From Hemiscyllium ocellatum (taxonomy: Eukaryota), in the NCBI RefSeq assembly GCF_020745735.1, contig NW_026868439.1, positions 1-44,669 of the forward strand: DNA of 44,669 nt, written 5' to 3'. Position 1 is the stretch's first letter; each line of letters starts with the position of its first letter. The translations under genes and the position numbers were made by a program. Positions 3,056-35,964 of this stretch are shown one piece after another. The notes under the pieces were generated by a model. The model was not told where the DNA came from. It did no database searches and was given only the letters and a program-made list of their open reading frames with translations.

Positions 3056-3074
3056 GAGCGCCCTCTGGTGTGCA
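3056..3074 (-). promoter_or_regulatory. CTCF-type binding motif downstream of the V1 RSS
   Basis: Minus strand TGCACACCAGAGGGCGCTC matches the CTCF core CCASYAGRKGGCRS except at one position. The core (3070-3058) begins 25 nt after the nonamer. Confidence 0.7.
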
Positions 3075-3095
3075 GAAACTGAAACTCTCAAGGTG

Positions 3096-3135
3096 GGTTT
3101 TTGTACAGTATCCACTATATCTCTGTATCAATGTG
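3096..3135 (-). other. Recombination signal sequence (23-class) of V1
   Basis: Heptamer CACATTG (3135-3129), 24-nt spacer, nonamer ACAAAAACC (3104-3096), directly after TGT GCC ATG CAG CT. Confidence 0.93.
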
Positions 3136-3617
3136 AGCTGCATGGCACAGAGATACATGGCACTGTCGGAGATGAGGATATTGCGAATAAATAGTTCAGT
3201 GATCTTGCCAGTTCTATTTGTAGAAAATCGATCATTGATGCCAGTGTTCCTGTGCAGATTCATCCCAATCAATCGAAACATGAACTCTGGAGGCTGCATG
3301 TGTCGCTGACTGTACCAGTATGCATTAGGGTTAGAAACACTTGTCTTTAAATTGCAGGAGATGGCGATGTCCTTTCCCTCTTCAATAGTCATTTCAGCAA
3401 CCGATTGTTCCACTGTATCCTGCTGGCTCCATTCTAACACGGGAAACGAAGTAAAAATGACAATCAATATCATACTCATATTGATCAACATAATCGTCAC
3501 CACCTCGTCGATAAACAATAACATTCTTCTTGCAATATTTAGCCCTTTTCTGATTAAGCGATACTTACTGAGAATAGACACGATTATGAGGATTAGTATG
3601 CGATGTTTCCCAATCAT
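3136..3617 (-). CDS. T-cell receptor alpha/delta-type V gene segment V1 (leader exon 3617-3569, 135-nt intron, V exon 3433-3136), apparently functional
   Basis: Leader MIGKHRILILIIVSIL with a phase-1 GT-AG intron. V exon DTVEQ...ISC(Cys23)...AYWYSQ(Trp41)...DSAMYLC(Cys104)AMQL has no stops and is followed by an RSS. Confidence 0.93.
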
Positions 3618-3732
3618 GTTTGCTGACTCTGCAACTCAAACAGAGCAGAATTATAGATCCTTGACGAACTGCTTGGCTGAATCTGTCAATAACATAGATG
3701 GTGCAGCAGAAGCAATCTCTTCAAAAGCACAA

Positions 3733-3790
3733 TTGCGTCAGAGTGAATGTGAGGGTTTGGGGGCGGGGTAAGAGCAGGAAACTGAAGCTT
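3733..3790 (-). promoter_or_regulatory. Probable V1 promoter: CRE/AP-1-like site, GC box, ETS-like core
   Basis: TGACGCAA (3740-3733) lies ~115 bp upstream of the ATG, with GGGGCGGGG at 3760-3768 and CAGGAA at 3775-3780. Equivalent sites occur at V0 (TGACTCAA 239-232) and V2 (TGACGCAT 7236-7229). CRE-like elements are typical of TCR V promoters. Confidence 0.45.
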
Positions 3791-6550
3791 TGGGCGGGGA
3801 GACGGTCGATTCTAAACTTGACAATTTGTCTAGTGACTCTCAGCGACCTTCAGAGCTGAGAGTGTTTTAAAAAAACATGACATTTCCATCACCGATCTGT
3901 GTTCTATTTTCAAAACTTGGAAAATGCTACTTTCCATGTTTCATACTCTACATTTTTTTTTTAAAACAGATACGAGTATTTTAATTTTATCCCCATAGAA
4001 TTTCTACAGCACAAGTAACATTTCTGAACATCAGAGACGTTCTTATAGTCCTGGTTTGAGGAATGGAAAATGATGTAGCTTGGACCCGCATTTAGCAATA
4101 TAATCTCCGACCGATCCACTGATCTTTCTTCACACATGGATGATTTCGACTACCGGGCGAACTCTGTTTCTGTGGGCCTGGTTTCCGTAGCTTCAGTTTC
4201 CCGTGGTTTACTGCAGCACAAATAAATTACAGGGAGCCTTCCAGAACCAGGGACCAGGGGCTGCCAGGAATGCACATTTTCATTCGATGAATGGGTTTGC
4301 TACTATCCACGATTTCAGGCTCCTGTAATACTTCTTGGAATGCATCCCCCATAGGTGTGGGGGACTACTGTATTCAACATTTAAATCAAGGAGAAACAAA
4401 AGTAAGTCGTGTCACTTGAATTTGAATACGATAGATGTTCTTTGTTAATTATAATGCTCAAAATGCAAACCATGAAAAAAACACTGGAAAACATTTATGC
4501 TATGTTTATTTTGCAATGGCGTGTAATGGCATCGTAGTGGTATTACTGCATAAGTAATTCAGAGGCTCAGGCAAGTGCTCTGCGGGGAGGTCGACTAATA
4601 GAATGTAAATTCTGTTATGAAATAATCTATAATTAATTAGTACCTGGAAGGATATTTGTGACATTGTAATCGATTGGTGTACAATAAAGAAAACACAAGA
4701 GGGCGCCTCAAATAAAGATGCTTTGATGCCGTTCGAAGTTTAGCACACATGCAGTTGCATCCATTTAACACCAGATGGAATCATTATATCATTTTAATTA
4801 CAAGAGCGAGCAACGGTGCGAGGGACTTTGACACTTTAATTCTATCAACATTCAGCCAAAATATCTCTCATTTTTCATCGATACGAGCTCATAAGAGCAC
4901 AGGAGAAGATGGTTGTTTCCACAGACATGACACACAAGTAAGAGAAGCAAAGTAAATTACAAGTCAAATCAAAAATTCCTGGCGATCACAACGGGTCCGG
5001 CGGCATCCAGGAAATGAAACAGAAAGCCAATGTTTCGCTTCTAGATTACTCTTTTTTGGAGCCTGTTAAATAATCATTGATACCCAAAACGTTAGAATGC
5101 TCGCTCTCGATGGATGGTGTCGGATCCGCCACGATTTTCAGCATGTATTGCTTTGAAAACAGATTCACTCACCTGCAGGAATTTGCTTCTAAACAGCAAA
5201 TCTGTGAAGCATTAAATGACATACGAGCAATGAAAGAGTGCTTAAAGAGACGTAGGGCAGATCAGAGAATAAACCAAAGGGGTCGTACACATGACCACAA
5301 GAGAAATGGCTGAGTTGTACACTCAATACTTCGCACCTGTATATTGTGTCCGGTTTAGATTCATGAAATGTTAACAATCTCCCTGCTGTCTGGTGAGTCT
5401 GTTAACAATAATATGGGAAATGTCCAGGGATTGCATTCATTATCTCTGTTTTGGGAGACTTTCTTCTGTATTCCAGAAACAATTTTAAAAGAGGAGGAAA
5501 TTGATATAAGTTGGTGAGTATTCCTAGGGATGAAGACTTGGACAGAGTTTTCGTATGTCCAGAAAAAGCACATATAAGGACTTTGAGGTAAAAAAGGGAG
5601 AAATCTTGGGACCACTGCTAATTGGGGGAGGACACAAATTCGCTTTTAGTCTTCGTTGGGTGAAGGGAAGTGTCATAAAACTCGATACATTAAATTTTTG
5701 TGCCTTTCAATAAATGGAGCAAGGCCACTCCAGTTCCTCAGCACATCTTGTTCATATTTCCAAATAATCGTTGCTTTTAGCGGTATGAGCGCACCATCTG
5801 ATCGACATGAGGTGGCAATTTCAGCGTTTTAGTGTGCGTCCTTGCCATCTCTGCAGGAATGTGGGATACATAGCAGAGAGACAAGCTGCGCTGCAGCGGA
5901 GAAGGAACCCATTAATATTTAAAGCAGTCATTTTGTTTAATGTGTGCAATTTAACAGAGAGCCATCCCAGTAAATCTGGACACCTAACTTCACCTCCCTG
6001 CATTCACCACCTCCCCATCACATAACCCAATTCACTCACCCACCAGGCCATAAATATTCTGTAAATATCTCGGACCTTCCCGCAGTATCTGCATGTACCA
6101 GAATAGTATTGGAATTCACTAAGTCGTCAAGTAAGGTCATTATAAATTTATGCCGTTTCTCTTGAGAATCAATAATTCGGGTTGGTTTTGTAAGGCAGAC
6201 TCTTTGCCATTTGTTTTTGTTTTACAGAAGGGAGTCTCTCAAAACTGCGACAATACACGCAATGCCTGGACGATTCCCATATAATTTTAAAACAGATTCA
6301 CCAGACAGCAGGGTATTTGTTATCGGTACCGAACTTCGAGAGTACATTGTGCCTGGTTTACTTTCAACAGAAATTGACAGACTGTTCTTCCTGTGTCTGA
6401 ATTCAAAATGTAATTTAGATGAGGAACATTCTGCACATAAAAATAAAACATTTTTTTTTCCCTGACGTAAGATTGGCTGCTCAATCATAGCTGATGACAG
6501 CTAAACATCAATCAATGAGAACAGGAGGTGTTAACTGTCTGCTCGTGCTT

Positions 6551-6569
6551 GAGCGCCCTCTGGTGTGCA
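6551..6569 (-). promoter_or_regulatory. CTCF-type binding motif downstream of the V2 RSS
   Basis: TGCACACCAGAGGGCGCTC, identical to the V1 site; the core begins 26 nt after the nonamer. Confidence 0.7.
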
Positions 6570-6591
6570 GAAACTGTAACGCTCCAGGTGG

Positions 6592-6631
6592 GTTTTTTGT
6601 ACAGGATCCACTATATTTCTGTATCAATGTG
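6592..6631 (-). other. Recombination signal sequence (23-class) of V2
   Basis: CACATTG (6631-6625), 24-nt spacer, ACAAAAAAC (6600-6592). Confidence 0.92.
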
Positions 6632-7113
6632 AGCTGCATGACACAGAGATACACGGCACTGTCAGAGATGAGGATATTGCGAATAAATAGTTTAGTGATC
6701 TTGCCAGTTCTATTTGAAGAAAATCGATCACTGATGCCAGTGTTCTTGTGCAGATTCATCCCAATAAATCGAAACATGAACTCTGGAGGCTGCATGTGTC
6801 GCTGACTGTACCAGTATGCATAAGAGTTAGAATCACTTGTCTTCAAATTGCAGGTGAGGGCGATGTCCTTTCCCTCTTCAACCGTCATTTCAGCAACCGA
6901 TTGTTCCACTGTATCCTGCTGGCTCCATTCTAACACGTGAAACGAAGTAAAAATGACAATGAATATCATACTCATATTGATCAACATAATCGTCACCATC
7001 TCGTCGATATACACTAACATTCTTTTTGTAATATTTAGCCCTATTCTGAGAAAGATATACTTACTGAGGTTTGACACGATTATGAGGATTGGTATGAGAT
7101 ATTTCTCAATCAT
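6632..7113 (-). CDS. T-cell receptor alpha/delta-type V gene segment V2 (leader exon 7113-7065, 135-nt intron, V exon 6929-6632), paralogue of V1, apparently functional
   Basis: Leader MIEKYLIPILIIVSNL|GTAAGT, acceptor TTAG at 6931-6930. V exon DTVEQ...LTC...AYWYSQ...DSAVYLCVMQL is open and followed by an RSS. Confidence 0.93.
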
Positions 7114-9747
7114 GCTTGCCGAATCTGCAACTCAAACAGAGCAGAATTACAGATCATTGACGAACTGCTTTGCTGATCTTGTCAATAACATAGATCGTGC
7201 AGCAGAAGCAATCTCTTCAAAAGCACAAATGCGTCAGAGTAAATGTGAGGGTTTGGGGGCGGGGTAAGAACAGGAAACTGAAGCTTTGGACGGGGAGACG
7301 GTCGATTCTAAACTTGACAATTTGTCTAGTGACTCTCAGTGACCTTCAGAGCTGAGAGTTGATTAAAAAAACATGACGTTTCCATCACCGATCTGTGATC
7401 TGTTTTCAAAACTTGGAAAATGGTACTTACCATATTTCAATACTCTACATCTTTTTATAACAAATACGAGTGTTTTAATTTTCTCCCCATAGAATTTCAA
7501 CAGCATAAATAACATTTCTGAACGTCAGTGACGTTCTTATAGTCCTGTTTTGAGGAATGGCAAATGATGTAGCTGGAACACTGCATTTGACAATATAGTC
7601 TCCGGCCGATCCACTGTACTTTCTTCACACATGGGTGATTTCAAGTACAGGGCGAACTCCGTTTCTGTGGGCCTGGTTTCCATAGCTTCAGTTTCCCTCG
7701 GTTTACAGCAGGACAAATATATTCCAGGGAGCCTTTCAGAACCAGGGACCAGGTGCTGCCAGGAATGCACATTTCCATTTAGATGAATGGGTTCGCTGCT
7801 ATCCACGATTTCAGACTTCTGTCATAGGTTTTGGAATGTATCACCCAAACGTGTGGGGGACTACTGCATTGAACATTTAAATCAAGGAAAAACAAAAGTA
7901 AGTCGTGTCACTTGAATTTGAATATGGTAGATTTTCTTTGTTACTTTTAATGTTGAAAACGTAAACCATGAAAAAAGGACGGGAAAACATTTATGCTATG
8001 TTTATTTTGCAATGGCGTGTAATGGCATCGCAGTGGATTTACTGCGTAAGTAATTCAGAGGCTCAAGCAAATGCACTGTGGGGAGGTCGAACAATTGGAA
8101 TGCAAATTCAGTTATGAAATAATCTATGATTGATTAGTACCTGGAAGGATATTTGTGACATTGTAATCGATTGGTGTACAATTAAAAAAAAACACAAGAG
8201 GAGTCCTCAAATAAAGTCGTTTTGATGCCGTTCAAAGTTTAGCACTCATGCAGTCGCATCCATTTAACACCAGATGGAATCATTATCTCATTTTAATTAC
8301 AAGAGCGAGCAACGGGGCGAGGGACTTTGACACTTTAATTCTATCAACATTCAGCCAAAATATCTCTCATTGGTCATCGACAGAAGCTCACGAGGGCACA
8401 GGAGAAGATGGCTGTTTCCGCACACATGACACTCAAGTAGGAGAAGCAAATTAAATTACAATGGATAACAAAAACGTCTGGCGGACACAGCCGGTCACGC
8501 GGCATCCAAGGAATGAAACAGAAAGCCAAAGTTTCGCGTCTAGGTTACTCTTCTTTGGAGCCAGTTGAAGAATCATTGAGATCCAAAACATTAGAATGCT
8601 TGCTCTCGATGGATGGTGCCTGATCCGCCGCGATTGTCAGCAGGTATTGCTTTGAAAACAGATGCAGTCACCTGCAGGAATTTGCTTCTAAACAGGAAAT
8701 CTGAGAAGCATTTCATGACATATGAGCTATGAAAGAGTGTTTAAAGAGACGTAGGGCTGATCAGAGAATAAACCAAAGGGGCCGTACACATGGCCACACG
8801 AAAAATGGCTAAGTTGTACACTCAATACTTCGCACCTGTATATTGTGTCCGGTATAGATTCATGAAATTTGAACAATCTCCCTGCTGTCTGGTGAATCTG
8901 TTTACAATAATAAGGAAATCGTCCAGGAATTGCGTTCATTATCTTAATTTTGGGAGACTTTCTACTGCATTCCAGAAACAATTTTAAGTGAGAAGGAAAT
9001 TGATATGAATTGGTGAGTATTCCTAGGGATGAAGACCTGGACAGACTTTTCGTAAGTCCAGATAATGCACATATAAGGACTTTGAGGGAAAAAATGGGTA
9101 GAAATCTTGGCACCACTGGTAATTGGGGGAGGAGACAAATTCGCTTTTAGTTTTCCTTGGGTGAAGGGAAGTGTCAGAAAACTCGAAACATTGAATTTTC
9201 GTGCCTTTCAATAAATGGAGCCAGACCACTCCAGTTTCCTCAGCACATCTTGTTCATATTTCCAAACAATCGTTGCTTTTAGCAGTACGAGCGCACCATC
9301 TGATCGACATGAGATGGAAATTTTAGCGTTTTAGTGTGCGTCCTCGCCATCTCTGCAGGAATGTGGGATACATGGCAAAGAGACAAACTGCGCTGGGGTG
9401 GAGAAGGAAGCCATCGATATTTAAAACAGTCACGTTGTTTAACGTGTGCAATTTAACAGAGAGCCATCCCAGTAAATCTGCAGACCTCACCACCACCCTG
9501 CCTTCACCATCTCCCCATCACATTACCCAACTCACTCACCCACCAGGCCATAAATATTCAGTAAATATCTCGGACCTTCCCGCAGTTTCTGGATGTACCA
9601 GACGATTATTGGAATGCACTAAGTAATCAAGTTAGCTGATTGTAAATTTATGCCGTTTATCTCGAGAATTAATCATTCTTGTTGGATTTGAAAGGCTGAC
9701 TCTTTGCCATTTGTTTTTGTTTTACAGAAGAAAGTCTCTCAAAATTG

Positions 9748-12455
9748 ACATCACGTGACATCACTTCCGCCCCCACATCATCGCTGATGCCACACGTTTA
9801 GTGACTTCCGCCACCTCTACTGCCGTTGTCTTGCCACTTCCGCCCCCACCCACGCACCCAACAGACCCAACTTTCACTATCCCCACCCCCCAGAACCCCG
9901 AGAGGAACACTACCCCTGCTCAAATCTCCACCCCCATTTCCCCAGCACCACACCCACTCCAGTTACAGGTTCTGTCCCCACTCCCAGCTCCACACCCACA
10001 CCAGATCCTAGCTCCCAGCCCTGCCGAGTTTTCACCATCCCTCCAGACATCCCCCTCATTGAGGTCGAACGATCAGTCCTCAGCAAAGGACTCACCTTCA
10101 ACCCCCTCCGTCCACACATCAATGAATCTAATACACCCCGTGACGTCGAACAATTCTTCTGTCGCCTCTGCCTCCAACCTTACTATCATAATCAGGACTC
10201 CCACCCAACTTACGTGGACCCGGTCACCCACCTCCAACACACTGCATCCACCTCGACATCCAGTGCTGGCTTCTTAACTGCCCTTGATCTCTTCATTTCC
10301 AGCTGCCGCCGGGACATTAACCACCTCAACCAGACTACCTCCCTCCCCGACTCCAACCTCTCACCCTCGCAACGTGCAGCCCACCAATCCCTCTGCTCCA
10401 ATCCCAACCTCACCATCAAGTCAGCGGATAAAGAGAGCGCAGTTGTAGTCTGGCGCACTGACCTCTACACCGTTGAAGCCAAACGCCAACTCGAGGACAA
10501 CTCTTCCTAGTGCCCACTCGACCATGACCCCACCCCCCATCCCCAAACCATCTTCTCTCAGACCGTACAGAACTTCATCACCTCAGGAGATCTCCCACCT
10601 TTGGCTTCCAACCTCATAGTCCAGGAACCTCGCACTGCCTGGTTCTACCTTCTTCCCAAGATCCACAAGCCTGACCACCCTGGCCGACCCATTGTCTCAG
10701 CATGCTCCTGCCCCACTGAACTCATCTCTACCTCCCTCGACACTGTCCTATCCCCCATAGTCCAAGAACTCTCCACATATGTTCGAGACACCATGCACAC
10801 CCTCCACCTCCTCCAAGACTTCCATTTCACCGGCCCCCAACGCCTCATCTTCACCCTGGATATCTAATCCCTCTACACCTCCATCCGCGACGACCAGGAC
10901 CTCCAAGCCCCCCGTTGTTTCCTCTCCAGACGTCCCCAGCAGTCCCCTTCCACCGACACTCTCATTCGTTTGGCCGAACTGGTCCTCACCCTCAACAATT
11001 TCTCCTTCGAATCCTCCCACTTCCTCCAGACCAAAGGGGTAGCCATGGGCACACGTATGTGCACCAACTATGCCTGTCTCTTTGTTGGCTACGTAGAACA
11101 GTTGATCTTCCATAATTACACTGGCACCACTCCACAACTCTTCCTCCACTACACTGATGACTGCATTGGCGCCACCTCGTGCTCCCATGAAGAGGTTGAG
11201 CTATTCGTGAACTTCACCAACACATTCCACACTAACCTTAAATTTACCTGGACGATCTCTGACACCTTCCTCCCCTCCCTGGACCTCTCCATCTCCATTA
11301 ATGACGACCGACTTGACAGTGACATTTTTTTTATCAACTCACCAACTCCAACAGCCGCCTGGATTACACCTCTTCCCACACTACCTCTTGCCAAAATGCC
11401 ATCCCGTATTCCCAATTCATCCGCCTCTGCCGTATCTGTTCCCAGGCGGACCAGTTCCACCACAGAACACACCAGATGGCCTCCTTCTCTAGAGACAGCA
11501 ATTTCCCTTCCCACGTGGTTAAAGTTACCCTTCAATGCATCTCGTCCACATTCCACACCTCCGCCCTTAGACCTCACCCCTCCAACTGTATCAAGGACAG
11601 AATGCCCCTCGTGCTCACCTTCCACCCTACCAACCTTCGCATAATCCAAATCATCCGCCGACTTTTCCACCACATCCAAAAAGGCCCCACCACCAGGTAT
11701 ATATTTCCCTCCCCACCCCTCTTCGCCTTCCGCAAAGACCGTTCCCTCCGTGACTACATAGTCAGGACCACGCCCCACTACAACCCACCCTCCCATCCTG
11801 GCACCTTCCCCTGCCACCGCAGGAACTGTAAAACCTGCGCCCACACCTCATCCCTCACCGATGCAGTCTCCTCTACATTGGGGAGTCTGGGCGCCTCCTA
11901 GCAGAGCGCTTTAGGGAACATCTCCGGAACACCCGCTCCCATCAACCACACCGCCCCGTCGCCCAACATTTCAACTCCCCCTCCCACTCTGCGTAGGACA
12001 TGGAGATCCTGGGCCTCCTTCAGCGCCGCTCCCTCACCACCAGACGCTTGGAGGAAGAATACCTCATCTTCCGCCTCGGAACACTTCAACCCAGGACATT
12101 AATGTGGACTTCAACAGTTTCCTCATTACCCCTTCCCCCACCTCACCCTACTTCCAAACTTCCAGCTCAGCACTGTCCCCATGACTTGTCCGGACTTGTC
12201 ATACCTGCCTATCTCCTGCTCCACCTATCCACTCCATCCTCTCCTCCCTGACCTATCACCTTCATCCCCGCCCCCACTCACCTATTGTACTCTATGCTAC
12301 TTTCTCCTCACCCCCACCCTCCTCTAGCTTATCGCTCCAAGCTCCAGGCTCTCTGCCTTTATTCCTGATAAAGGGCTTTTGCCCAAAACGTCGATTTCGC
12401 TTCTTCTTGGATGCTGCCTGAATTGCTGTGCTCTTCCAGCACCACTAATCCACAA
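9748..12455 (+). mobile_element. Penelope-like retroelement (RT + GIY-YIG endonuclease), near full length, disrupted by stops and frameshifts
   Basis: RT motifs FYLLPKIHK...GRPIVS, LDI*SLYTSI, GVAMGT, FLHYTDD, FTWTIS...LDLSI; C-terminal PLVLTFHP and CHRRNCKTC; partly deleted GIY-YIG (LYIG...AERFREHL); 3' pLTR with a hammerhead-like motif at 12361-12396. Confidence 0.9.
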
Positions 12456-14479: not shown

Positions 14480-14950
14480 ACGAAAAACGGTCTTGTCTTG
14501 CTCTTCGTGATAATCTGTCTTGAAAGAAGGTATTTTATTTGCCAGCAAAATTCAATCTCCCCCCACCCACCCCCTTCCCACCCAGATGATTTTTAACATA
14601 TTTTATTTCATGAACATGAGGTCAGCAGGGGACAACATAATAACCTGTTCCTGATATAGCAGTTAAAGAGAGAAATAACAATAACATGCAACCTGAAGAC
14701 GTACGATTCTGTCCCTAAAGTTTACTACCACAGTGAGCAAACACAGTAGCTTCCACAGCATGTTTATTTGTTGCAGAAGTGATGTCAAACAGAAATTATG
14801 ACTCCACGGATATATTCTCTGTCAAATTGACTAAAATTACGAAGATTACCAAGTTCCCGACCAACAAGACCGTCATCCTCACCAGCGCGGTTCATCTCTG
14901 TGCAATGAGTGGCACTGATGCAGAGTGAAAGCAGATCCCATACAAAAAAA
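14480..14950 (+). pseudogene. Inverted TCR V pseudogene (V3-like family) with decayed leader, V exon and RSS
   Basis: The 46-nt leader ACG-KNGLVLLFVIICLE has ATG>ACG and donor GT>GA, and matches the V3 leader at 28/46 nt. The V exon (~14613-14912) reads QQGTT**PVPDIAVKE / ITCNLKT / DIFSVKLTKITKITKFPTNKTVILTSAVHLCAMS. It is followed by GG-CACTG, 24 nt, ACAAAAAAA (14942-14950). Confidence 0.85.
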
Positions 14951-16974
14951 AACTCATTTACAGTTGCAGCGAAAGTCAATATTCCATAATTATTTATTCA
15001 GTAACACCAGATTTCTTTGTCATAATGGAAGGGATATATGGATCTATCTGAGGAGATTGTCCTGACGTTTCGACTTATTTGAGGAGCTATTGATTCAGCA
15101 TTAAGCCAAATTTCAAGTAACCAGTTGTAATACCACTTGCAACCAGTCCCACACCTGACTCATCATTCTGACTAGGAAATATACTACAATTCCATCTGTG
15201 TCACAGAGTGACAATCTCTTAACTCCCTTCCAAACAACACTCCCGGTATCCTCATACACCAATGGCAACAACAGGTCAAGGACCCAACTCACCAGCACCT
15301 TCTCCTTGGCGATTAGGATGAGACAAGAATTTTTCTGTAAATGAATCTTTAGAAATATAAACGCATCTTTTTTGTCGCCATTTCCTCTGGAAGACTGAGC
15401 CACCTGTCATCTGAGCTGATGTTCCATTTCAGGGCATTTCCTTTCACTGGCAGGCAGCTCATCACTCTCAGTCTCTCAGATCTATTCAGGGTATTAGGCA
15501 GTGAGTTGAGAGTATCTTGCGTAGGTCAACAGATGAGTGAGGGTCGAGAGTAGAACCAATGTTTTAAAATATCCACGTTCCTTTCCTCGAATGAACAAGA
15601 CGATGCTGTTGGTCAGAGTCTAGACTCTGTGGCGATCAATGCTGATTGGTAATTATGCATCAAAGACATTCCATTTTCTTCTTTTATTTCCCGGAGGTAA
15701 TCTGATTCTGAAGTTGAAGTATCTCTCTGTCCAATAATTTAGTTATTGAACAGTCTTGTCAATTCTGAGTCATGATCATTTTGTGACTGCTGCCACTGTC
15801 TTCAGACAGAAGGAGAGCTGTTCCCATGACAACGACTGGCGGCACAAATATTGAATCTCCTAGCAGCAACACACAGACATCCGCAGCTCATTTTGTGGAA
15901 GCAATTGAGAAAATCTAATTAGAAAATAGATTTGTTCGATTTTGTTTCTCTGTCAAATTCCAGACAGCGAATGCATTTAAAGCAAACATGCAAACTGCTA
16001 GAGGAGTGGGCCGAAAATACAGATTTTAATGTTTCGGATTCTGGGGCACTTGTTCAAAATAAATTCACGATTTTTTGGGCCTGAAGTTGACTGAATCTCC
16101 AGTGAGTTACTGATTTCTCAGACTCGCATTGGTGGACAACAGACGGAAACGGACAAAAATGAGCCAAAACATCGTTTTCTTAGAGTTAGTTTCGTGCGGC
16201 CTCTTTAACTCTCGTGGAAGTGCCTGCATGTTTCCCTCTGTGGATGAAAATGAAGTTCACTAACAGCAGGGAGTGTTGAAACAGTTTTACCATGTCGAAA
16301 ATCAGTTTCATTCGTTTCTAAATAAAATATTAGGTTGAGAATATTACAAAGATGTACACTAGAAAGTCCACGACAACGAAGGCTGTGTGTCGAGTGCTGG
16401 AAAATAGCATCGGAACAGATGATCGGAATTGAATCGATGGGCGAAGACATTTCCTTCTCTGCTGGTAAAAGTCGATGGCATGATAATTTTGCAAAACAAT
16501 AAATGCATTTCAGTCGTGAAAGAGATCGAAAATGAAATAGATCAAAAGTTAAAAATGTTATGATTTTAAAAAGTTAAATGGCAATTCAATGTCTTCCCTT
16601 TTGGTCCAGCAGTTAAGATTCAGCATGTACTCATGCCATCTCAAATTAATTTCCAAGTCAGGAAATGAGGATTTATTGCTCCTTCACAAACTCATCAACT
16701 GGAGTCTTTGACACTGAAATCACTGAAACCAGATCAGTTCTGTCAGAATCAGTGAGAATGTATCACATCACTTGAGCCAGGTGCAAATGGGAGAGATCAT
16801 CGTTATCTAGTATCTTAGATCACTGGGCTGCAGTGTTACAGAAAATTAATTTCTTACTTAAATATACAAGGTTCTCAGCGAACTTCATATGTTTGAGGCA
16901 GAATTTTTTTTCACTTTTGTACACAATATTGGCTCAGTAGGGATAATCTGGGGAAAGGGCTGGGACGATACAGA

Positions 16975-25686: not shown

Positions 25687-25736
25687 TTTCCTTCCTTCCT
25701 TCCTTTATTATTTCCTTCTTTCCTTCCTTCCTTCCT
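25687..25736. repeat. (CCTT)n microsatellite
   Basis: tttccttccttccttccttt...tttccttctttccttccttccttcct. Confidence 0.8.
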
Positions 25737-26229: not shown

Positions 26230-26880
26230 TGAAAAACTCGCTTTTCCTGCTTCTGTCATCCAGATATCCTTCCACCACACCTCCTCCTTTCCCCGCTCCA
26301 CTGCTCTAAATCCCACCCTAAATGCAACGGACATAGCGTTCTCCGTGTTCTGACCTTCCACCCCTCCAGTCTCCACATTCAAAATATCACACGTACACAT
26401 TTCCACCAGCTCCAATTTGACCCACCACCAAAATCAACTTCCCCTCCCCACCCCTCTCTGACTTCTATAAAGCTGTCCCATTTGCCAAAGGCTGGTTTGC
26501 GTTGCCATCCCCAACAACACTCAGGTAACTTTCCCTGACTTCAAAATATTTGCAAAACCTTTAGTGTACCCCCATTCGCCTCCATCCAGCGCTTCAAACA
26601 GTCCTTCCAATTAAGTCAAAGGTACAGCTGCCTCTTCTCCACACCACATTACAGTATCCAGTGTTCACGGTGTGGTCTACTCTACGACGGGAAGAGTCCA
26701 ATTATAACCTCAGTTCACATTTCGCCGAGCATGCCGAACTGACCTCCCAGTCACTGCCCATTTTAATTCCCCTTCCCATTCCCTTCCCATATGACCTTCC
26801 TTGGCCTCCTCCACTGCTGCAGCAAATCCGAACGCAAGTTGGAGGAACAAGGAATCATCTTCTGCATATCCAGGGAATGA
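26230..26880 (+). mobile_element. Decayed Penelope-like fragment (same family as 9748-12455, C-terminal/GIY-YIG region)
   Basis: Remnants of the LVLTFHP, FPSPPLS and RCGLLY motifs, colinear with 11500-12100. Confidence 0.65.
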
Positions 26881-28884
26881 ACAAATTAGTAAAGCTGCAG
26901 TGATTAGGAGCAATCTTGTTTGAAATGTTAAGTGATCGACGTTTAAATTCATTATATAGAACGCATAAAATGTTAACAACTAATGCAGAAAATAAGACAA
27001 CTCAAAAACTCGTACACACAAAAACCACTTATTTCGAGACACAGACGCTAGACATACAACCACATGCACACATTTTCATGTAAAGTTAGAGGTACGCGCA
27101 CTACGAGACACAGCTTTTATAAAACACATACTGTTATGGATTTGAAAGCATATACGTACTTTTAAGAGAATGAATGTTGTTTTACATTGGGAGTTTAAAA
27201 GCGCATGACATCTGACAAGATAGCACTCTCAGAGTGCACTGCAAATTTGAAAAAATGCAACATTTGGCAGTGGAATTGATGCATGATTTTTTAGAACAAT
27301 TTGAATTTGACCAATCTGCTTTAATTATGTCTCAGTGTAATAAGGCACAATCGATTTTGAATTTATTGATTTGCCAATATCGAACCAATGACACAATCCG
27401 ATGTTGGGTGGATAAAATTGGCAATTTGACAGTTTGAAATTTAGACAGATCGTAACTGTCATCGACATACACTGCCAGCTAAAACACTAGCTATCAAAGG
27501 CACCCCTTACAAATGAAACATTTTTGCCATCAAATACAGTAGATGACCCAGGGACATCTCCCACAGAAAGAAGTAGGACAGCGGAGATGACAGCCACTGT
27601 TGATTTTGAGATTAAGTTGATGTAATTTTAGTACGGTTGTATTGGAACAGCATATTGTTATAGAGTTGTATGGAGATGAGAATCATGAAAGAGAAAGAAG
27701 GCTTAATGATACAAATAGTTGTTGTTTATTGTTTACTTTTAGAGTTAAACAATGCATTGGTAATCTTTCTTCAAATAGAGAGATTCAGGAGTTCTCCTTA
27801 GTCATACTTTTACAAACTACGAGACAAGGTATGGTCTTCTGGGTGTTTGGTTTAATTAGCAAAAGGCTTACCGCCTTGTCATAAGAATACATTTACATCA
27901 AAATTCCTTCACAGAAAGTCAGGTTAGCATAACATTCAAGCCCTGACACAGACGGAAACCGAACTGAGGAAATAGACAAACACTGAGAAAAGAAACAGCT
28001 AAGAAGAAAAAAACTGCACAAAAGGTCTGAAAAATTATCAGATAAAAAAAACTAGTCATATTCTGAGCTTCGTTTTATTTCGTATTCAAATCAAATTTGC
28101 TCATAAAACATTCAGGACAGATCTCCATCAAAAGCAAATCAAGAAATGAAGAAAAGTAAACTTCAATCTGAAGTTAAAACTAAAGTTAAGCAACCAATAC
28201 TCCTCTTTCCAGCAAAAGTTCATTCCTGATGAGAAACTAGAACTATTCAAAGTGAAAGAAATATGTACAATGCCTATCGGGGCAAGTCAAAATACACACT
28301 TGCTTAAATATCTTGCACTTCCACTCACAGCTGTCAAATGCCTCCACAAATAACATCGAAAATCATATTCTGACAATAATTATTCATGCAAAATAACATA
28401 ATTATTCTAAAGAGCAATGAATACACTAGATAGTATTGTAACCGCATTATAAAGTTATCTTATCAAATATCTAACCGATCAATATTTTTTCATGTTTCAT
28501 CACAGCATAAAATTTTGAACAACATTGTTTTCTTTGCAACATAAGTACAGATCTACGAGTTGCCACAACATCATCTGATGTAATTTAATACGACAATATC
28601 CAATGTAAATTCTTTGAAATCTCTTATTCTCCGAGAGAGTTGAAAGCTGGAAAAAAACATATGGCTCATGGAAGGGAAGAAATTAATTTCATGCAAATTT
28701 ACAAAATAAAAAGAAAAGAACTTACTGCGGATCCATTTCCTACCTGGTGCACCAATAAAGATGAAAATAGGATCGTAACTGTAAATAAGAGCCCATTGCC
28801 TCCTCCACACATTTTTGAAGCGTGATTCCTGAAGCTTCAGACCTTAACTCAGTGACAGATTCAAATCAATTGTAAGTTATTTCA

Positions 28885-31700
28885 GATAGTCAATTTCCGA
28901 TCCAAACCGCTAATCACCCTCAATCCCATGTTCCCGTATTTTGTAATACCCTACCGTTGGAAATCTTCTCAAACGCCTTCATGAAATCCATATGCATCAC
29001 AACACATCAACTGATTTACCCTCATTCTACTGCTTACTCACCTTCTCAACAAACTCAATAAAGTCTATGAGACACGACCTACCCTTCACAAAACTGTTTT
29101 TACTATCCCTAATCAAATTATATCTATCGAGTAGATTATAAATCCGATCTGTTCCGGCCTTTTCCAACACTTTATCCACAATTGGAATAAGGCTCACTGG
29201 TCTGTAATTACCAGGGTTGCCTCTACGCCTCTTTTTGAGTAAGTGATCAACATTTGCTTCTTCCTGTCTTCTGGGACTATTCCTGTAGACAATGACAACA
29301 TAAAGATCCAAGTCAAAAGTTCGTCAATCTCCTCCCTGGCATCCCAGGGAATCCTTGGATAAAATCCATTCGGCACAAGGGGCTTCTTTATTTTCACAGT
29401 TTCCAGAATTGCTCACATCTCTTCTTCGTGAACATCAACTCATCTAGTCTAGTAGTCAATAACACAGTATTGTCCTCCACATCACTATCTTTTCTTCCAG
29501 TGTGAATACTAATGAAATATATTCATTTGGCGTTTTCCCTATCTACTCTGACATGGCATACAATTTACCACTGCTATCCTAGATTGGATCTCATCTTATC
29601 TCGTCATTCTTTAATTCCTAACGTATCTAGTGAAAGCCTTAGGAATTTCCTTGATCCTATCCGTGCCCTCTCGTGGTTCTTCTTCACTCTATCTTTAAGT
29701 CTTTCCTGTCTAAATTCTAATTCACAAGCGCCCCAACTGCGCCCTAAAGTCTCATCCTGACATGAGTATTCATCTTCGTCTTGACAAGAGCTTCAATTTC
29801 TTTGATATACCATGGCTTCCCCGTACGATAACTTCCTCCCTACGTGACAAGTGCACAGCTATCAAGAACACACAGTAGTTATTCCTTGAATAAGCTCCAC
29901 ATTTCAATTCTGCTCATTTCTGGCAATTTCCTTCCTCATCTTATGCATCCTAAATCTTGCCTAATCGCATCACATTTGTCTTTCCCCCAGCTATAACTCT
30001 TGCCCTGTGGTATATACCTATCCCTTTCCATTGCTCAAGCAAACATAATCAAATTGTGGTCATTATCATCAAAGTGCTCACATTCCTCCAAATCAAACAT
30101 CTGGACGACTTCATTACCCAGTACCAATTCCAATACGTACTCGGTCCTTGCATGCCTCTGTACATACTGTGTCAGGAAACCCTCCTACACACTTTGGACA
30201 AAAACTGACCCATCTAAAATACTCAAACTGCAGTATTTCCAAACAATATTTGGAAAGTTAAAGTCCTCCATAACAACTAACATTTGATCCTCGTTCCTAA
30301 CCAAATGATCTTTGCTATCCTTGCCCTATGTCTCTGGAACTGTTGGAGGCCTATAGAAAACTCCAAACTGGGTAACCTCTCTTTTCCTGTTTCTAACATC
30401 AGCCTATTCTACCTTAGTCGAGGAATCTTCAAATGACGTTTCTGCCACCGCAATACTGTCCGTGATTAACAATGCCACACTCCCCATCCACCTCTTTTAC
30501 CATTTTCTCTGGTCTTACTTAAATGTCTAAATCCTGGAGCCTGCAACAACTATTCTTGGCCTTGCTCTACCTATGTCTCCGAAATGGTCACAGCATCCAA
30601 ATCCCTGGCACCGAACCATGCTGTGAATTCACCCACTTTATTCTGGATGCTACTGGTGTTGATGTAGACACTTTTCAAACAAATTTCTTGCTTGCCCGTG
30701 CCCTCTTGCGACTTTAAAATCTTACTTCGAATCTCACCACTGTCAACCACTGTACACTGGAACTATAATTTTGATTCCCATGCCTCTGCTGATTTAGTTT
30801 AAACCCTCCCGAAGACCATTAGAAAATTCCCGCCACAACCCAACCCCTTCACAGATATTGGTACCTCTCTGATTTGGGTGAAACCATCCTGTTTGTAAAG
30901 GCATCACCTACCCGAGGCAACTCTGTATGTTCTTGCTTGAACCTTGCACCTTAGTTCCCTGAATTTCTGACTTAAATCCCATCACTCTTCTTACCTGTGT
31001 GGTTGGTGCCATGTGGACCACGGCTTGGGGCTGCTCCCCAACACCCTCAAGGGTCCCGAGAACACGATCAAACACGTCACGAAATGTGGCACCAGGGAAG
31101 CAACAAACCGGCTGTTATTACCTCTCATTCCCAGAGAATCTCCTGTCAACCCCCAACAATAGATTTGTAAATGACGAATGTTCCGCTCCTCTCCCCATTT
31201 CCCTTGTGAGTAATAAGAACGGACTCTGTGCAAGAGACCTGTCCTCCATTGCTCACGCCTGGAAATTTCCTTCCCCCGCCCTCCCCCCACACCCCCACCT
31301 AAAACAGTACGCAAAATGGTATACTCGTTGTTGAGTGAATCGGCCACTATTAATCCCTTTACTGTCGGCCACTTCCCTTTCCATCAGCTGACCGTAACCC
31401 ATCTACCTTCTTCTTGTACCTGAGATGTAGCTACCTTTCTGTAACTACTCTCGATAACCTACTCCACCTCCTGAATGTTCCGAAGTTCATCCAGCTCTAG
31501 CTTCAGTTCCCCAACGCAGGTTTCGAGGAGATGGAGTTAGGTGCCTTCTGGCAGATGAAGTCAGCATGTATACTGATGATGACCCTTAACTTCCACATTC
31601 TGCAAGAGGAACATTCAACTGCCCTAACCTCCATTCCCACTATTCTAAATACTGTAAATGTCAAACGGCTGAAGTAACCTAGATGTAGAACACATACAAC
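28885..31700 (-). mobile_element. CR1-type LINE retaining its 5' part (ORF1 zinc finger/esterase, endonuclease, start of RT); 3' half lost
   Basis: ORF1 start MEVRAVECSSCRMW at 31634; esterase-like VVH-GTN near 31010; ORF2 pieces PNGFYPRIPWDAREEI, GNPGNYRPVSL, SFVKGRSCL and MDFMKAFEKI; the element ends at ~28885. Confidence 0.85.
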
Positions 31701-32559
31701 GCTTTTAGGATATTTTCTTAGAACAGCTTGTTGTGTATTAGATTGGAAAGCAGGTTTCACTGGACGTGGCAATGTAAAACTAAATGGGACGAAATAATTT
31801 TCTCATAATGAAGAAACCCCTGAAGGATCATTGAACAAATAACTGTTGAACGTTACATTCCGTTTGAGAGCTCCTGCCACTTCACTTTAAACATATTTTG
31901 CTCGTTTCATGGCATGACGGCATGATCTGATCACGAATGCATCGAATTCTAATTGTGGAGTTTTGATTGGGATCTGCTATGTGTTTGCAACGTCGTGAGT
32001 TTCACAAGATTTCATTGTCAGAGTTCAGGGTTGTGCCAAATATTACTTGTTAATTTTCACTTTTCTATTAAATATGGAGTAAAAACCAATTCGTGATTCT
32101 GTCATTCATGTTCCAATTCTCTGTAATGAACCAAAGCGTGAATTTAGAGCATGACAAAGATGCAGGCAATATCTGAACTGGTGTGATTTTTTTTTGTGTT
32201 CAAGCTTTATTTTTATGTGCTATCAATTTCGTCGTTAACAGTTTTACTAACAATTGAATGTTGCACTATTTCCTGTAGCTGCAACAATCATATGGCAGTT
32301 ACATCAACAGTCAGAATAACGTTCATTTAGATCAGTATAATCATTTTAACATCTTCACTGCATCATTACTATTGTTACAGCATTCAAAGCAGAGATTGGG
32401 AGAATGGAGTTTTACTGGGAACAAATACCCAATCGGCCATGAGTTAATGATGAGGATGGAGTACGGAAATATTTTGATTAATACGTCCTGTGTCTAACTG
32501 TCATTCCCGCCAGAAAAGTTCAGTCAATGCGGAGTTAGAAATCCCTGTTTCCTTTCACT

Positions 32560-32800
32560 GTTGATCTAATAAATGACAGAAATGGGCAAGAAGAAGGAAT
32601 CTCTGCGCTAAGAAGTTCAAGATACAGTGAAATAAGCAAATGAAGTCTGAGGGCTGGGAAAATGCCAACATAAAGGAGAGTGGAAGGATTGGGCAGCCCT
32701 TGGTTACTGTTCAATGAGGTGGTGCAAAAACTTATGACTATATGTTGTGAAATCTGTCCACATGCTGCATGTGTTAAACTGCTGAGGAACATATGAAGTG
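32560..32800 (+). mobile_element. Highly decayed CR1-type RT fragment
   Basis: Weak resemblance to the CR1 RT C-terminal region; recognised by eye only. Confidence 0.35.
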
Positions 32801-35800
32801 GAAGTTTGATCAGAGAAAGGCATAAATTATGGAAAACGAGAATGTCAGTGAAATTTCAAATTATTAAACCCTAACCTATGTAAAGGCATATTCCAATGTT
32901 TTCCTCCCATTTTTGTGCCCATTTACTTTTCAATTGATGACTGTTTCCTTTGGACTTTTACCACTGAATCATCTTCCCCTGTCACTTTTAACTTTAATTT
33001 AGATGGATCATTACAGTCAGACTGTAATGAATGAAACTTCCTATCATCTATCTACAGCAAAATCACATTGGTTAGTTTGCAAACAAGCAGGTGCATTCGA
33101 CCGATCAGAAGGCACACTTTTGAATAGACAAAATGTATTTCTGCCTTTCTTTGCTAACAAAGAACGTAACGACGTTTTCCTGCTCAGATGGAAGTCCTTC
33201 ACGTCAAGTACAATGCTAATCTGTAAATTTTCTCAACAACCTGTTCAAACATGTGATTGTACGTTTTCGAGAGGACGTCAAATTTCCTGCCATAGATTTC
33301 CTGATATTATCATCGCATTGTTACAGCTGTTTTCATTATTTTCTAATCAACCTGCTTGAAGTTACTACGCACCTCCGGACTTGACCCAGGAACCGTGTGA
33401 CAAACGCTGTTCCAATAAACACCTGACGCTCACGCTGCTTTGCTATTGACCAGTTTGCTATCTGACTGATACCTCGTACTAACCAATGACTTCCTGGAAG
33501 GGCAAACAAGAACTCCAAGCTCAGTCAGATCAGTCTCATTCTGTCGAGGAAACACCATCGTCCTGTTAGTACCATCGCTTCGCAAAACTTTAGAAATATT
33601 CTTTAATTTACTCTTGAAGGCATCAAGGATGTAGACACTCAAACAAATAGCCAGTGATAATGAAACTTACAAACATTGATTTATAAGACCAGTGCATTAA
33701 TCGCTGAGCTAGGGAACCTGAAATATACAGGCATTTGTCATCAGGGCAATTCTGTCCAGTATAATATAACCAGATACTGTGACAACCCACAAAATGAACT
33801 GTCTGGCCAAGAGTGGTAATACCCCATATTCTAACCGGACAATTCGTACAGTGTGAAGCAGACTGTTCAGTTCGGCGAATACATATTGACACTCTGAAGA
33901 ACATTCCACCCAGATCTCAGCCTTTACATTAACACTGCAACCTAAGTAAGCATGCACACGCCTGGACTCTGAGCAGAAACACTTCCCGGCAGAGAGCAAA
34001 TTTGCATACAGACAGTCGCTTGATTGTGAAATCGAACTCAGACTCGTGGCAGTGTGACGTGGCCGGCTCAGCACTGAGCCACCGTTCAATACAGCTCATG
34101 CCATTATCAGGAGATGTCCAGGTTTAGAGAAAACTATAACCACTGTTGCATTAATTACAAACAAATCTTTCACAGAGCGTAGGGTTTGAAGGATAAACTA
34201 ATATTTATTGGCAACCTCTAACTGCCCTGGAGAAAGTGTTGTTCAGCTGAATTCATGACTGCTGCTATCTTTGTTGTGTTGAGACTCTGGAATGGTTTAC
34301 AAAAGCTGATTCCAACAGTACACTGAACAAATGTTGAAATAGTAACTACAAATCAGTTTAGTGAATGACATAGAATCACTTTGGTCGAAGTGATACATAA
34401 AATCCTTGCATTTTAAAAATGAAATTTTATATCAATAAACAGACAATGAAAGAAAATCAACTCTCTTCGAAATTGAAACTGAATTTCAATCACCTATTTG
34501 ACAAGGGTTTGCATATAAAACGTTGCTTTGCTTTGACTTACTGAACAATGTCCTTCTTTCTGCCTGAGCAAAGTATACTTACTGATTCATAATCGTCAGA
34601 CGTGGGTGAGAGAATGGAACCTGCAACCTCGAAACTTTTCATTTTTTAAATATTAACTTGATTACCATTCACTGTAAAAACAACGTGAGTCGAGGGGAAT
34701 CCTGTTAACAAATGCTCAATGTCAGCAGGGTTTGAAAAGCAGGGTTTAAAATTAACACTCAGATCAAAAACGGATGTGATGTAGAAAAGCATATAAGCAT
34801 TTCAAGCACTCACTCATCTATTTTATTGTCATTTAGCTCCAAAGCTATTGCAGTACGTAGCTACAGAAATCAGATCTCAGGACCATTTTCATTCCCACTG
34901 CAACATCGTTTTCCATCTTCCACACCTTCCATTCGTCTGTCCCGTCCAAAGATTAATATCTGAAGCCAAATGTTGAATATTTGAACAGCTGTATGTGATT
35001 TGAAAATGCGCTTTTGTTCAAGCATTTGCAAACATATGTGTCAAAATGCTTTGACATTAAAGTACAGAAAGTGCAGCTAAATTGACGTTGGCTCTCTGAA
35101 GCGCATTCTAGTCTGACGAAACCTATTTGAATTTCAACCCTCTGTTTGACAATTACTGAGGATGGCAGTTACAGCACAATGCAAATTCAAATGAAAATAA
35201 TGTATTCACCGTGCAGTTGACGGCACTGATGCAGAAATGACATAGACCTCACAGGCTGTGATCGAGCCAAAAGGAGGACGTTTGGGAGAAGGCTCTTGCG
35301 TGCGCAGATATGTGTATTTGCATATGTGTGTGGGTGTGTGTTTCAGAGAACTGCTCACATGTCTGTGGACACAGAAGTCAGGCACTTTTAATGCGTGGCA
35401 TAATGTGTTGCTGCTGTTTTCACGAAGGCATGTTGCAAAACCTCTGAATTAGTCTCCCAAGAAGGGACAAATGCTTACATGAGCAATATGTGCCTAGTCC
35501 TCACGCCACTCTGCCCCCCTCCACAGTCGAATTTTAAATTGTAATGCAAGTGCAAAGTAAATATCATCCAATGTGCTGAGCGGAAGGAACTGAATGGAGA
35601 GATGAGAAGGAAAGGCATTGGAGTCGTTCATTTCCAACAAAACAGGAAATAGAATAGCACAGAAATATTTCTGACTGTTATTCTTACCATATTGGCATCC
35701 TGAACTTACAGAGCGATAAAAATCTGCAAATGTAACTAAAGATTTGTTACTGAGATTCATTTTTTATTACTCAAGACTTTGGTCCTGTGATTCTTCCTGT

Positions 35801-35830
35801 AGAGGTGAATTGTTATGTTCCGAGGTGTGA

Positions 35831-35849
35831 GACCGCCCTCTAGTGACCA
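35831..35849 (-). promoter_or_regulatory. CTCF-type binding motif downstream of the V3 RSS pair
   Basis: TGGTCACTAGAGGGCGGTC; the core CACTAGAGGGCGG (35845-35833) begins exactly 25 nt after the distal nonamer. Confidence 0.72.
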
Positions 35850-35860
35850 CTAATTGGAAG

Positions 35861-35964
35861 TCTGTGAGAGCGTTTTTGTACGGGCCGTGCCATCTGTTTG
35901 CATCAGTGTGGGTCTGTGAGAGCGTTTTTGTACGGGCCGTGCCATCTGTTTGCATCAGTGTGGG
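35861..35964 (-). repeat. Perfect 52-bp tandem duplication containing two complete RSSs
   Basis: 35861-35912 equals 35913-35964, with GTCT microhomology at 35860, 35912 and 35964. Proximal RSS: CACACTG 35962-35956, 24 nt, ACAAAAACG 35931-35923. Distal RSS: 35910-35904, 24 nt, 35879-35871. Confidence 0.97.

What the first reader, a model, noticed from the sequence alone, without database searches (positions are those of the whole stretch)
3056..35870. A CTCF-type motif sits a fixed 25 bp behind the RSS of every intact V, across unrelated V families
Seen: V1 (CACCAGAGGGCGC, 3070-3058), V2 (6565-6553) and V3 (CACTAGAGGGCGG, 35845-35833) each carry a CTCF-core match 25, 26 and 25 nt past the nonamer. 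All point the same way, towards the presumed D/J-C side. V3 differs from V1/V2 in leader, intron length and the intervening 25 nt, yet motif and spacing are kept. The inverted pseudogene at 14950 has no such motif. Established: in mouse Igh, CTCF sites just downstream of proximal VH RSSs stall cohesin loop extrusion and make those V segments available to scanning RAG; mammalian Tcra/d V CTCF sites are mostly promoter-associated. Inference: a shark TCR locus may use an RSS-plus-CTCF module, implying this architecture is as old as jawed vertebrates or arose independently. I am not aware of it being described in cartilaginous fish.
Basis: partly seen in the sequence, partly recalled or inferred. 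Interest (0 to 1): 0.8.

Follow-up and report, generated by a model that had tools for sequence, protein, structure and literature searches.

The report
CTCF site behind shark V signals
Three shark T-cell-receptor V gene pieces each carry a strong binding motif for the genome-folding protein CTCF about 25 bases behind their recombination signal, and the same arrangement is kept in a skate. This suggests that a V-selection device so far known from mouse antibody genes also exists in cartilaginous fish; nobody has yet tested whether CTCF binds there.

Summary
V1, V2 and V3 (all minus strand, TCR alpha/delta-like V-set) each have a high-scoring CTCF motif on the V strand, 25, 26 and 25 nt past the 23-RSS nonamer.

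Two caveats apply. V1 and V2 are copies in a 3.5 kb tandem duplication, so the window holds two independent cases, not three. V1 and V3 are 46% identical, so "unrelated families" is overstated.

Between the V1 and V3 lineages the intron, RSS spacer, linker and downstream flank are as diverged as shuffled DNA. The 19-nt motif is 15/19 identical (z = 5).

A little skate scaffold has three V segments. Each has a strong motif at +25 or +32, and these are the only strong motifs in its 13.5 kb. A catshark-like contig has a weaker motif at +26.

Bamboo-shark V segments and one unidentified V keep only decayed remnants at the same offset, and so do three pseudogenes. Two bamboo-shark V segments of other families have nothing there. 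Frog and whitefish V arrays have none within 150 bp of an RSS.

Best reading: an old, selectively kept RSS-linked CTCF element in elasmobranchs, analogous to the elements behind mouse proximal VH segments. Occupancy and function are untested.

The parts
3056..3074 (-). CTCF-type site behind V1 (19-mer TGCACACCAGAGGGCGCTC); its core starts 25 nt past the nonamer
   Evidence: PWM 19.4; IUPAC hit with 1 mismatch; sequence read
3096..3135 (-). V1 23-type RSS: heptamer CACATTG 3135-3129, 24-nt spacer, nonamer ACAAAAACC 3104-3096
3136..3617 (-). V1 gene segment: leader exon from ATG 3617 to 3569, intron, V exon 3433-3136 (V-set, ...YLCAMQ)
   Evidence: Pfam V-set 9.8e-10
6551..6569 (-). CTCF-type site behind V2, a 19-mer identical to V1's; the core starts 26 nt past the nonamer
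   Evidence: PWM 19.4
6592..7113 (-). V2 gene segment with its RSS (ATG 7113, V exon to 6632, heptamer 6631-6625, nonamer 6600-6592). It is a paralogue of V1 inside the 3.5 kb tandem duplication.
35831..35849 (-). CTCF-type site behind V3 (19-mer TGGTCACTAGAGGGCGGTC); its core starts 25 nt past the distal nonamer
   Evidence: PWM 20.4
35860..35967 (-). Two tandem 52-bp copies of the V3 RSS unit (heptamers at 35962 and 35910, nonamers ending at 35923 and 35871). The duplication does not include the CTCF site.
   Evidence: TRF: period 52, 2.1 copies, 100% match. A contig of related organism B skips one copy.
35963..36430 (-). V3 gene segment: leader exon 36430-36385, intron 36384-36270, V exon 36269-35963 (V-set, ...YFCAMR)
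   Evidence: Pfam V-set 7.9e-16; best PDB matches are TCR alpha chains; a spliced contig skips exactly 36270-36384
3075..3084 (-). Conserved 10-nt block directly 5' of the 19-mer (V1: TTCAGTTTC-type; consensus TTCCAGTTAG over 8 lineages). Possibly a CTCF upstream (ZF9-11) motif. The equivalent blocks are at 6570-6579 and 35850-35859.
   Evidence: Column conservation. Position 3 nt 5' of the core fits the 2-7 bp linker given in PMC12885311. The sequence match is only partial.
14644..14950 (+). Inverted V pseudogene with in-frame stops, a broken heptamer and an A-rich nonamer. It has no CTCF PWM hit, only a decayed remnant of the module.
38945..38963 (+). Strong CTCF-type site in the opposite orientation, 2.5 kb upstream of V3 and not RSS-linked. 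Its duplicate lies at 41378-41396.
   Evidence: PWM 20.0 and 20.8; tandem duplication 37208-39506 / 39505-41928; no V exon nearby

Best explanation
Each of these TCR alpha/delta-type V segments carries a conserved CTCF-binding element, linked to its 23-RSS, about 21-22 bp (19-mer) or 25 bp (core) beyond the nonamer. The element lies on the V strand, so it points to the side where the J-C region lies if joining is deletional.

Shown here:
- The motif is real and far beyond chance.
- It is the only conserved non-coding island besides the heptamer and nonamer between diverged V lineages.
- It is kept at the same offset and orientation in a skate, so it dates at least to the common ancestor of sharks and skates.
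- It decays in pseudogenes and in some intact V segments.

Inferred: in thymocytes CTCF sits on the site with its cohesin-stalling side facing the J-C side. Cohesin that reels V chromatin past a J-based recombination centre pauses there and holds the adjacent RSS in front of RAG, which raises use of that V. This is what the elements just 3' of mouse proximal VH RSSs do. Deletional joining removes the RSS and the site together, so the next upstream V would become the next stop in later rounds of V-to-J joining.
For: Motif and position.

Conserved island between V1 and V3:
- V exon z = 11.1
- 19-mer 15/19 identical, z = 5.0
- intron z = 0.8
- RSS spacer z = 0.9
- nonamer-to-motif linker z = 1.1
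- 100 nt downstream z = 0.3

Skate: scaffold L005 has three intact V segments, each with PWM 17.9 at +25, +32 and +32 on the V strand. These are the only strong hits in 13.5 kb. The IUPAC pattern gives 3 hits against 0.13 expected.

Other cartilaginous-fish V segments: a catshark-like contig (L007) scores 12.8 at +26. A Heterodontus protein that reads through the RSS has a tail compatible with the motif in the same register (protein level only).

Enrichment: 6 of 12 intact V segments score 17 or more in a 21-nt window, against a 0.00065 background (P = 7e-17). With duplicates collapsed it is 4 of 10 (P = 4e-11).

Anchored alignment: core pairwise identity is 0.83 among the four strong lineages, against 0.28 downstream.

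The mammalian CTCF motif is valid in these animals. MA0139.1 motifs mark skate TAD boundaries with an orientation bias (PMC10115646). Lamprey CTCF binds the same core plus upstream motif (PMC5504073).

Known mechanism in mouse Igh: elements just 3' of proximal VH RSSs promote V use, and pseudogenes lack them (PMC7930373; Ba et al. preprint; PMC5859386 Table 2).
Against: - There are no binding, accessibility or contact data for any shark or skate thymus.
- The J-C side is not in the window, so "pointing to J-C" rests on V orientation alone.
- Only two independent cases are in the window, and about 10 independent V segments in all. They were found by protein similarity, not by a locus-wide census.
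- 5 of 12 intact V segments lack a good motif: three have decayed remnants and two, from other families, have none. The element is therefore not required for a V to stay intact.
- The link between intact status and motif is not significant (7 of 12 intact against 0 of 3 pseudogenes).
- In mouse Tcra/Tcrd, CTCF sites are mostly upstream of promoters, so the TCR precedent differs.
Confidence: 0.55

Rival explanations
1. Passive inheritance. The motif was part of the DNA unit that was copied when this V family expanded. It survives in some copies because cartilaginous fish evolve slowly, and it has no role in recombination.
For: V1 and V2 share it through a recent 3.5 kb duplication. All V segments that carry it or a remnant of it belong to related V groups. 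It has decayed in several intact V segments (L003 5.5, L004 -0.3, L009 4.1).
Against: Between V1 and V3 every neutral segment is at shuffle level while the 19-mer is 15/19 identical. The shark V3 core and the skate core are 12/12 identical (CACTAGAGGGCG) with unalignable flanks. Conservation stops exactly at the end of the motif (downstream identity 0.28-0.30).
Confidence: 0.12
2. It is a real CTCF site but works as an insulator or unit boundary. It separates each V gene's promoter and chromatin from its neighbour, or protects against methylation spread. Its closeness to the RSS would then be incidental and would not affect RAG access.
For: CTCF sites commonly act as boundaries. The window also has strong opposite-strand sites upstream of V3 that form a divergent pair with the V3 site. 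Frog and whitefish arrays have same-strand CTCF motifs between V genes, 0.4-3.5 kb from the RSS.
Against: The offset from the nonamer is held within a few bases (19-mer at +21 or +22 in 7 of 9 homologous sites) across sharks and a skate. A plain boundary would not need that. The mouse precedent shows that RSS-adjacent sites act on V use.
Confidence: 0.2
3. The conserved block is bound by another factor, or serves another purpose such as germline or antisense transcription or a splice acceptor (the TTCCAGTTAG block ends in AG). On this view its likeness to the CTCF motif is a coincidence.
For: A second conserved block, TTCCAGTTAG, abuts the motif and looks like a 3' splice site. There are no binding data.
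Against: The four strong lineages fit the CCASYAGRKGGCRS core at 13 of 14 positions. The chance rate is about 1e-5 per position. The adjoining block sits where the CTCF upstream motif is expected. The RNA contigs laid on the window showed only the leader-V splice and no joint at this site.
Confidence: 0.08

Closest known systems
CTCF-binding elements just 3' of the RSS of mouse Igh proximal VH segments (VH81X-CBE, VH2-2-CBE; families 7183, Q52 and others)
   Same: A CTCF core motif lies within tens of bases 3' of a V 23-RSS, on the V strand, so it points to the D/J-C side. Each V has its own site. Pseudogenes lack a good site. The inferred role is to stall loop extrusion so that RAG at the recombination centre meets the adjacent RSS (PMC7930373, PMC5859386, Ba et al. 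preprint).
   Different: Here the V segments are TCR alpha/delta-type, not VH, and the animals are sharks and a skate. The offset is nearly fixed (core at +25 or +26, +32 in one skate family). The site can follow a tandem RSS duplication. There are no occupancy or genetic data. Common descent with the mouse elements cannot be shown.
CTCF sites of mouse Tcra/Tcrd V segments
   Same: The locus type is the same. In mouse, most sites (129 of 144) also point toward J-C (PMC5859386).
   Different: The mouse sites lie mostly upstream of V promoters or between genes, not behind the RSS. In the window there is no same-strand PWM hit within 1 kb upstream of the V1, V2 or V3 start codons.
Intergenic CTCF motifs in frog (Pelobates cultripes) and whitefish (Coregonus) V arrays fetched here
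   Same: They are mostly on the V strand, which fits a general J-C-directed orientation in V arrays.
   Different: They lie 0.4-3.5 kb from the nearest RSS. None of about 27 V segments has a same-strand hit of 12 or more within 150 bp after the nonamer.

Membership tests
RSS-associated V-segment CTCF-binding elements (mouse Igh proximal VH type) | Match to the CTCF core consensus | tested here: met
   PWM 19.4, 19.4 and 20.4. IUPAC CCASYAGRKGGCRS with 1 mismatch gives 6 hits against 0.27 expected. The skate gives 3 hits against 0.13 expected.
RSS-associated V-segment CTCF-binding elements (mouse Igh proximal VH type) | Lies within about 100 bp 3' of the V RSS | tested here: met
   The 19-mer starts 21-22 nt past the nonamer for V1-V3, and 21 or 28 nt in the skate.
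RSS-associated V-segment CTCF-binding elements (mouse Igh proximal VH type) | Motif oriented toward the D/J-C side, convergent with downstream anchors | tested here: inconclusive
   All sites are on the V coding strand. No J, C or downstream anchor is in the window, so the direction is inferred from V orientation.
RSS-associated V-segment CTCF-binding elements (mouse Igh proximal VH type) | Present at recombining V segments and absent or defective at pseudogenes | tested here: inconclusive
   0 of 3 pseudogenes have a usable motif, against 7 of 12 intact V segments at a score of 12 or more. This is not significant, and 5 intact V segments lack it.
RSS-associated V-segment CTCF-binding elements (mouse Igh proximal VH type) | CTCF and cohesin occupancy in developing lymphocytes | not testable with these tools
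   No ChIP, CUT&Tag or ATAC data were available. The one read-laying run gave only DNA and RNA contigs.
RSS-associated V-segment CTCF-binding elements (mouse Igh proximal VH type) | Site needed for normal use of the linked V | not testable with these tools
   This needs repertoire data or mutation experiments.
Promoter-associated CTCF sites of mammalian Tcra/Tcrd V segments | Site upstream of the V promoter | tested here: not met
   There is no same-strand PWM hit of 8 or more within 1 kb 5' of the ATG of V1, V2 or V3. The nearest hits are on the opposite strand at 4690 (12.8) and 38945 (20.0).
Transposon-borne CTCF sites | Motif embedded in a dispersed repeat | tested here: not met
   Self-comparison finds the V-linked sites only inside the V1/V2 duplication. 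V1, V3 and skate flanks are unalignable. Two weaker hits (11167, 29661) lie in repeat-like, apparently transposon-derived DNA, but they are not V-linked.

The most novel reading that the evidence does not exclude
The RSS-plus-CTCF-site module is ancestral to jawed-vertebrate V segments. On this reading, RAG scanning by cohesin loop extrusion, with a stop placed directly behind each V signal, was already in use in the common ancestor of cartilaginous and bony fish. The mouse proximal VH elements would be its surviving descendants, and other lineages moved or lost the site.
Probability: 0.15. Interest if true: 0.85.

Novelty: new member of a known kind. Interest (0 to 1): 0.6.

Why it matters
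RSS-adjacent CTCF sites are the clearest known link between genome folding and the choice of V segments, and they are documented only in mammalian Igh. Here the same arrangement appears in TCR-type V segments of sharks and a skate. It has a near-fixed offset and is preserved while the surrounding DNA has randomised. That is sequence-level evidence that loop-extrusion-guided RAG targeting is old, or has evolved more than once. It also gives a concrete set of sites to test in cartilaginous fish thymus. The natural series of strong, weak and decayed motifs behind otherwise intact V segments offers a ready test of whether motif strength sets V usage.

Tried and rejected
- Word-indexed protein search with the V1 exon found nothing. 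The same search with the skate protein gave only two distant hits.
- Look-ups in Heterodontus, Mobula and Scyliorhinus torazame returned gene positions but no DNA, because the files were too large. Those species could be judged only from one read-through protein tail.
- All 12 contig look-ups are used, so no locus-wide census was possible.
- The single read-laying run showed that organism B's contig covers the V3 CTCF site with 6 differences in 58 nt. The per-base table was truncated, so I could not see whether the motif itself differs.
- A leader-like ORF over the 38945 site (MAVSVHLLNIISLFYS followed by GTAAGT) was considered as the start of a plus-strand V. I rejected it because no V exon follows and the second copy does not keep it.
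- RSS-like hits at 37702 and 39984 were rejected because no V reading frame lies upstream.
- The Callorhinchus protein tail is too short to reach the +25 position.
- The Jain 2018 paper, which I recall as giving the exact VH81X offset, is not held, so I cite no figure for the mouse offset.
Full report
**What is in the window**

The window holds three intact V gene segments on the minus strand. Each has a leader exon, a short intron, a V-set exon ending in Y-x-C-A-M, and a 23-type RSS.
- Pfam calls both V types V-set.
- The best solved-structure matches of V3 are TCR alpha chains and a V-delta.
- Related database proteins are named TCR alpha V.
- A spliced contig from a relative's RNA library skips exactly 36270-36384, so the V3 leader intron is used.

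A fourth V (14644-14907, plus strand) has in-frame stops and a broken heptamer.

A note of this scan (s1-236395) suggests the genome is the epaulette shark. I did not verify that.

**The observation**

Each intact V has a strong CTCF-type motif on its own strand just past the nonamer.
- The IUPAC consensus with one mismatch gives 6 hits against 0.27 expected, and 0 of 100 shuffles reach 6.
- The only other hits of that strength are two plus-strand sites at 38945 and 41378. They are copies within a 2.3-2.4 kb tandem duplication upstream of V3, and no V is nearby.
- Two weaker hits, both 16.4, lie in repeat-like DNA.

- V1 and V2 are copies in a 3.5 kb tandem duplication (1-9747, 89% identity). 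The window therefore offers two independent cases.
- V1 and V3 are 46% identical and share their N-terminal motif. They are related subfamilies.
- V3 carries a perfect 52-bp duplication of its RSS unit that stops short of the CTCF site.
- A contig of a related species (organism B) lacks that duplication, so it is recent.

**Is the motif kept by selection?**

I aligned V1 and V3 segment by segment against shuffles.

| Segment | z score |
|---|---|
| V exon | 11.1 |
| CTCF 19-mer (15/19 identical) | 5.0 |
| Leader intron | 0.8 |
| RSS spacer | 0.9 |
| Nonamer-to-motif linker | 1.1 |
| 100 nt downstream | 0.3 |

The motif is thus a conserved island in saturated DNA.

**Other species**

A profile search found V-array gene models, and I fetched their DNA.

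| Source | Result |
|---|---|
| Little skate scaffold L005 | Three intact V segments, 30-48% identical to the window's. Each is followed by a PWM 17.9 site on the V strand at +25, +32 and +32. These are the only strong sites in 13.5 kb; IUPAC 3 hits against 0.13 expected. |
| Catshark-like contig L007 | 12.8 at +26 |
| Two bamboo-shark V segments (L003, L004) and an unidentified contig (L009) | Clearly homologous but decayed sequence at the same place (5.5, -0.3, 4.1) |
| Two bamboo-shark V segments of other families (L006) | Nothing |
| Three pseudogenes | Only decayed remnants |
| A Heterodontus protein that reads through the RSS | A tail in register with V1's and compatible with a core motif; protein level only |

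- The shark V3 core and the skate core are identical over 12 nt, with unalignable flanks.
- Anchored on the motif, core identity among the four strong lineages is 0.83, against 0.28 in the next 30 nt.
- Against the background of the same loci, 6 of 12 intact V segments have a site scoring 17 or more in a 21-nt window (P = 7e-17). With duplicates collapsed it is 4 of 10 (P = 4e-11).

**Outgroups**

I examined a Pelobates frog array named TCR alpha V (about 12 V) and a Coregonus whitefish V array of unconfirmed locus type (about 15 V).
- Neither has a same-strand site of 12 or more within 150 bp after any nonamer.
- Their CTCF-type motifs are mostly on the V strand but lie 0.4-3.5 kb from the RSS.
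- The RSS-adjacent placement is therefore not a by-product of V or RSS sequence. In this small sample it is peculiar to sharks and skates.

**A second conserved block**

Directly 5' of the 19-mer is a 10-nt block with consensus TTCCAGTTAG. Several of its columns are invariant in 8 lineages.
- It ends 3 nt before the core, which has a TGG-like triplet in between.
- A CTCF upstream motif bound by zinc fingers 9-11 lies 2-7 bp 5' of the core (PMC12885311).
- Lamprey CTCF binds that two-part site too (PMC5504073).
- The position fits, but the sequence match is only partial. I leave this as a lead.

**Mechanism**

The mammalian CTCF matrix is valid in these animals. In the little skate it marks TAD boundaries with an orientation bias that indicates loop extrusion (PMC10115646).

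In mouse Igh:
- Proximal recombining VH segments have a CTCF element just 3' of the RSS, and pseudogenes lack it.
- Mutating the element lowers use of that VH.
- Repairing a defective element makes a pseudogene the most used VH (PMC7930373).

By analogy I infer that these sites stall cohesin coming from the J-C side and hold the adjacent RSS at the recombination centre. Deletional joining would remove the site with the RSS and pass the role to the next V upstream.

None of this is shown. No occupancy, contact or repertoire data were available, and the J-C side is outside the window.

**Rivals**

- Passive inheritance is made unlikely by the island pattern and the skate data.
- A pure insulator role does not explain the fixed offset.
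- A non-CTCF factor is unlikely, because the four strong lineages fit the core at 13 of 14 positions.

**Novelty**

Four full-text searches that combined CTCF with shark, elasmobranch or cartilaginous fish and with RSS or TCR terms found nothing relevant. The library misses most subscription journals.

In mouse, TCR alpha/delta sites are mostly upstream of promoters.

That note is unchecked and is not independent evidence.

**Verdict**

- This is a new member of a known kind of element, in a new locus type and lineage.
- Function is untested.

Noticed in passing
window 38945-38963 (+) and 41378-41396 (+): Two top-scoring CTCF-type sites (20.0, 20.8) lie in the opposite orientation to the V-linked ones. 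They are copies within a 2.3-2.4 kb tandem duplication (37208-39506 / 39505-41928), 2.5 and 4.9 kb upstream of V3. With the V3 site they form a divergent pair, which may be a sub-domain boundary.
   Followed up: partly
window 35860-35967 (-): V3 has a perfect 52-bp tandem duplication of its RSS unit that excludes the CTCF site. A contig from related organism B has a single copy, so the duplication is recent. Earlier scan reports describe longer RSS arrays behind related shark V segments.
   Followed up: partly
window 3075-3084, 6570-6579, 35850-35859 (-); same position in L003-L009: A conserved 10-nt block (consensus TTCCAGTTAG) lies directly 5' of the CTCF 19-mer. Its position fits the CTCF upstream motif, but the sequence match is only partial. 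It also looks like a splice acceptor.
   Followed up: partly
window 1-9747: A 3.5 kb unit is repeated about 2.8 times in tandem (89% identity) and carries V1 and V2. The third copy breaks off at 9747, before the place where a V would be expected.
   Followed up: partly
window about 9750-12050: A GC-rich (55%), strongly C-skewed block follows the truncated third unit. Its ORFs of 141-224 aa have no Pfam match. It contains a CTCF-like hit (16.4) at 11167-11185.
   Followed up: partly
window 14913-15020 (+); L004 16263-16350; L006 8358-8260 (-): All three V pseudogenes keep recognisable but decayed remnants of the block-plus-motif module behind a damaged RSS. This fits loss of constraint after the V died.
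   Followed up: partly
L001 (Pelobates cultripes) and L002 (Coregonus 'balchen'): In the frog and whitefish V arrays, CTCF-type motifs are mostly on the V strand but lie 0.4-3.5 kb from the RSS. In whitefish they recur at about +370 to +410 and about -660 from the heptamer. This suggests a different, lineage-specific placement.
   Followed up: partly
window 2376-2705, 6062-6205, 9559-9612 (-): Weak V-like remnants (for example PIIVWYIQKLREGPRYLL) lie downstream of V1 and V2 in each 3.5 kb unit. They are probably an old dead V of another family.
   Followed up: no
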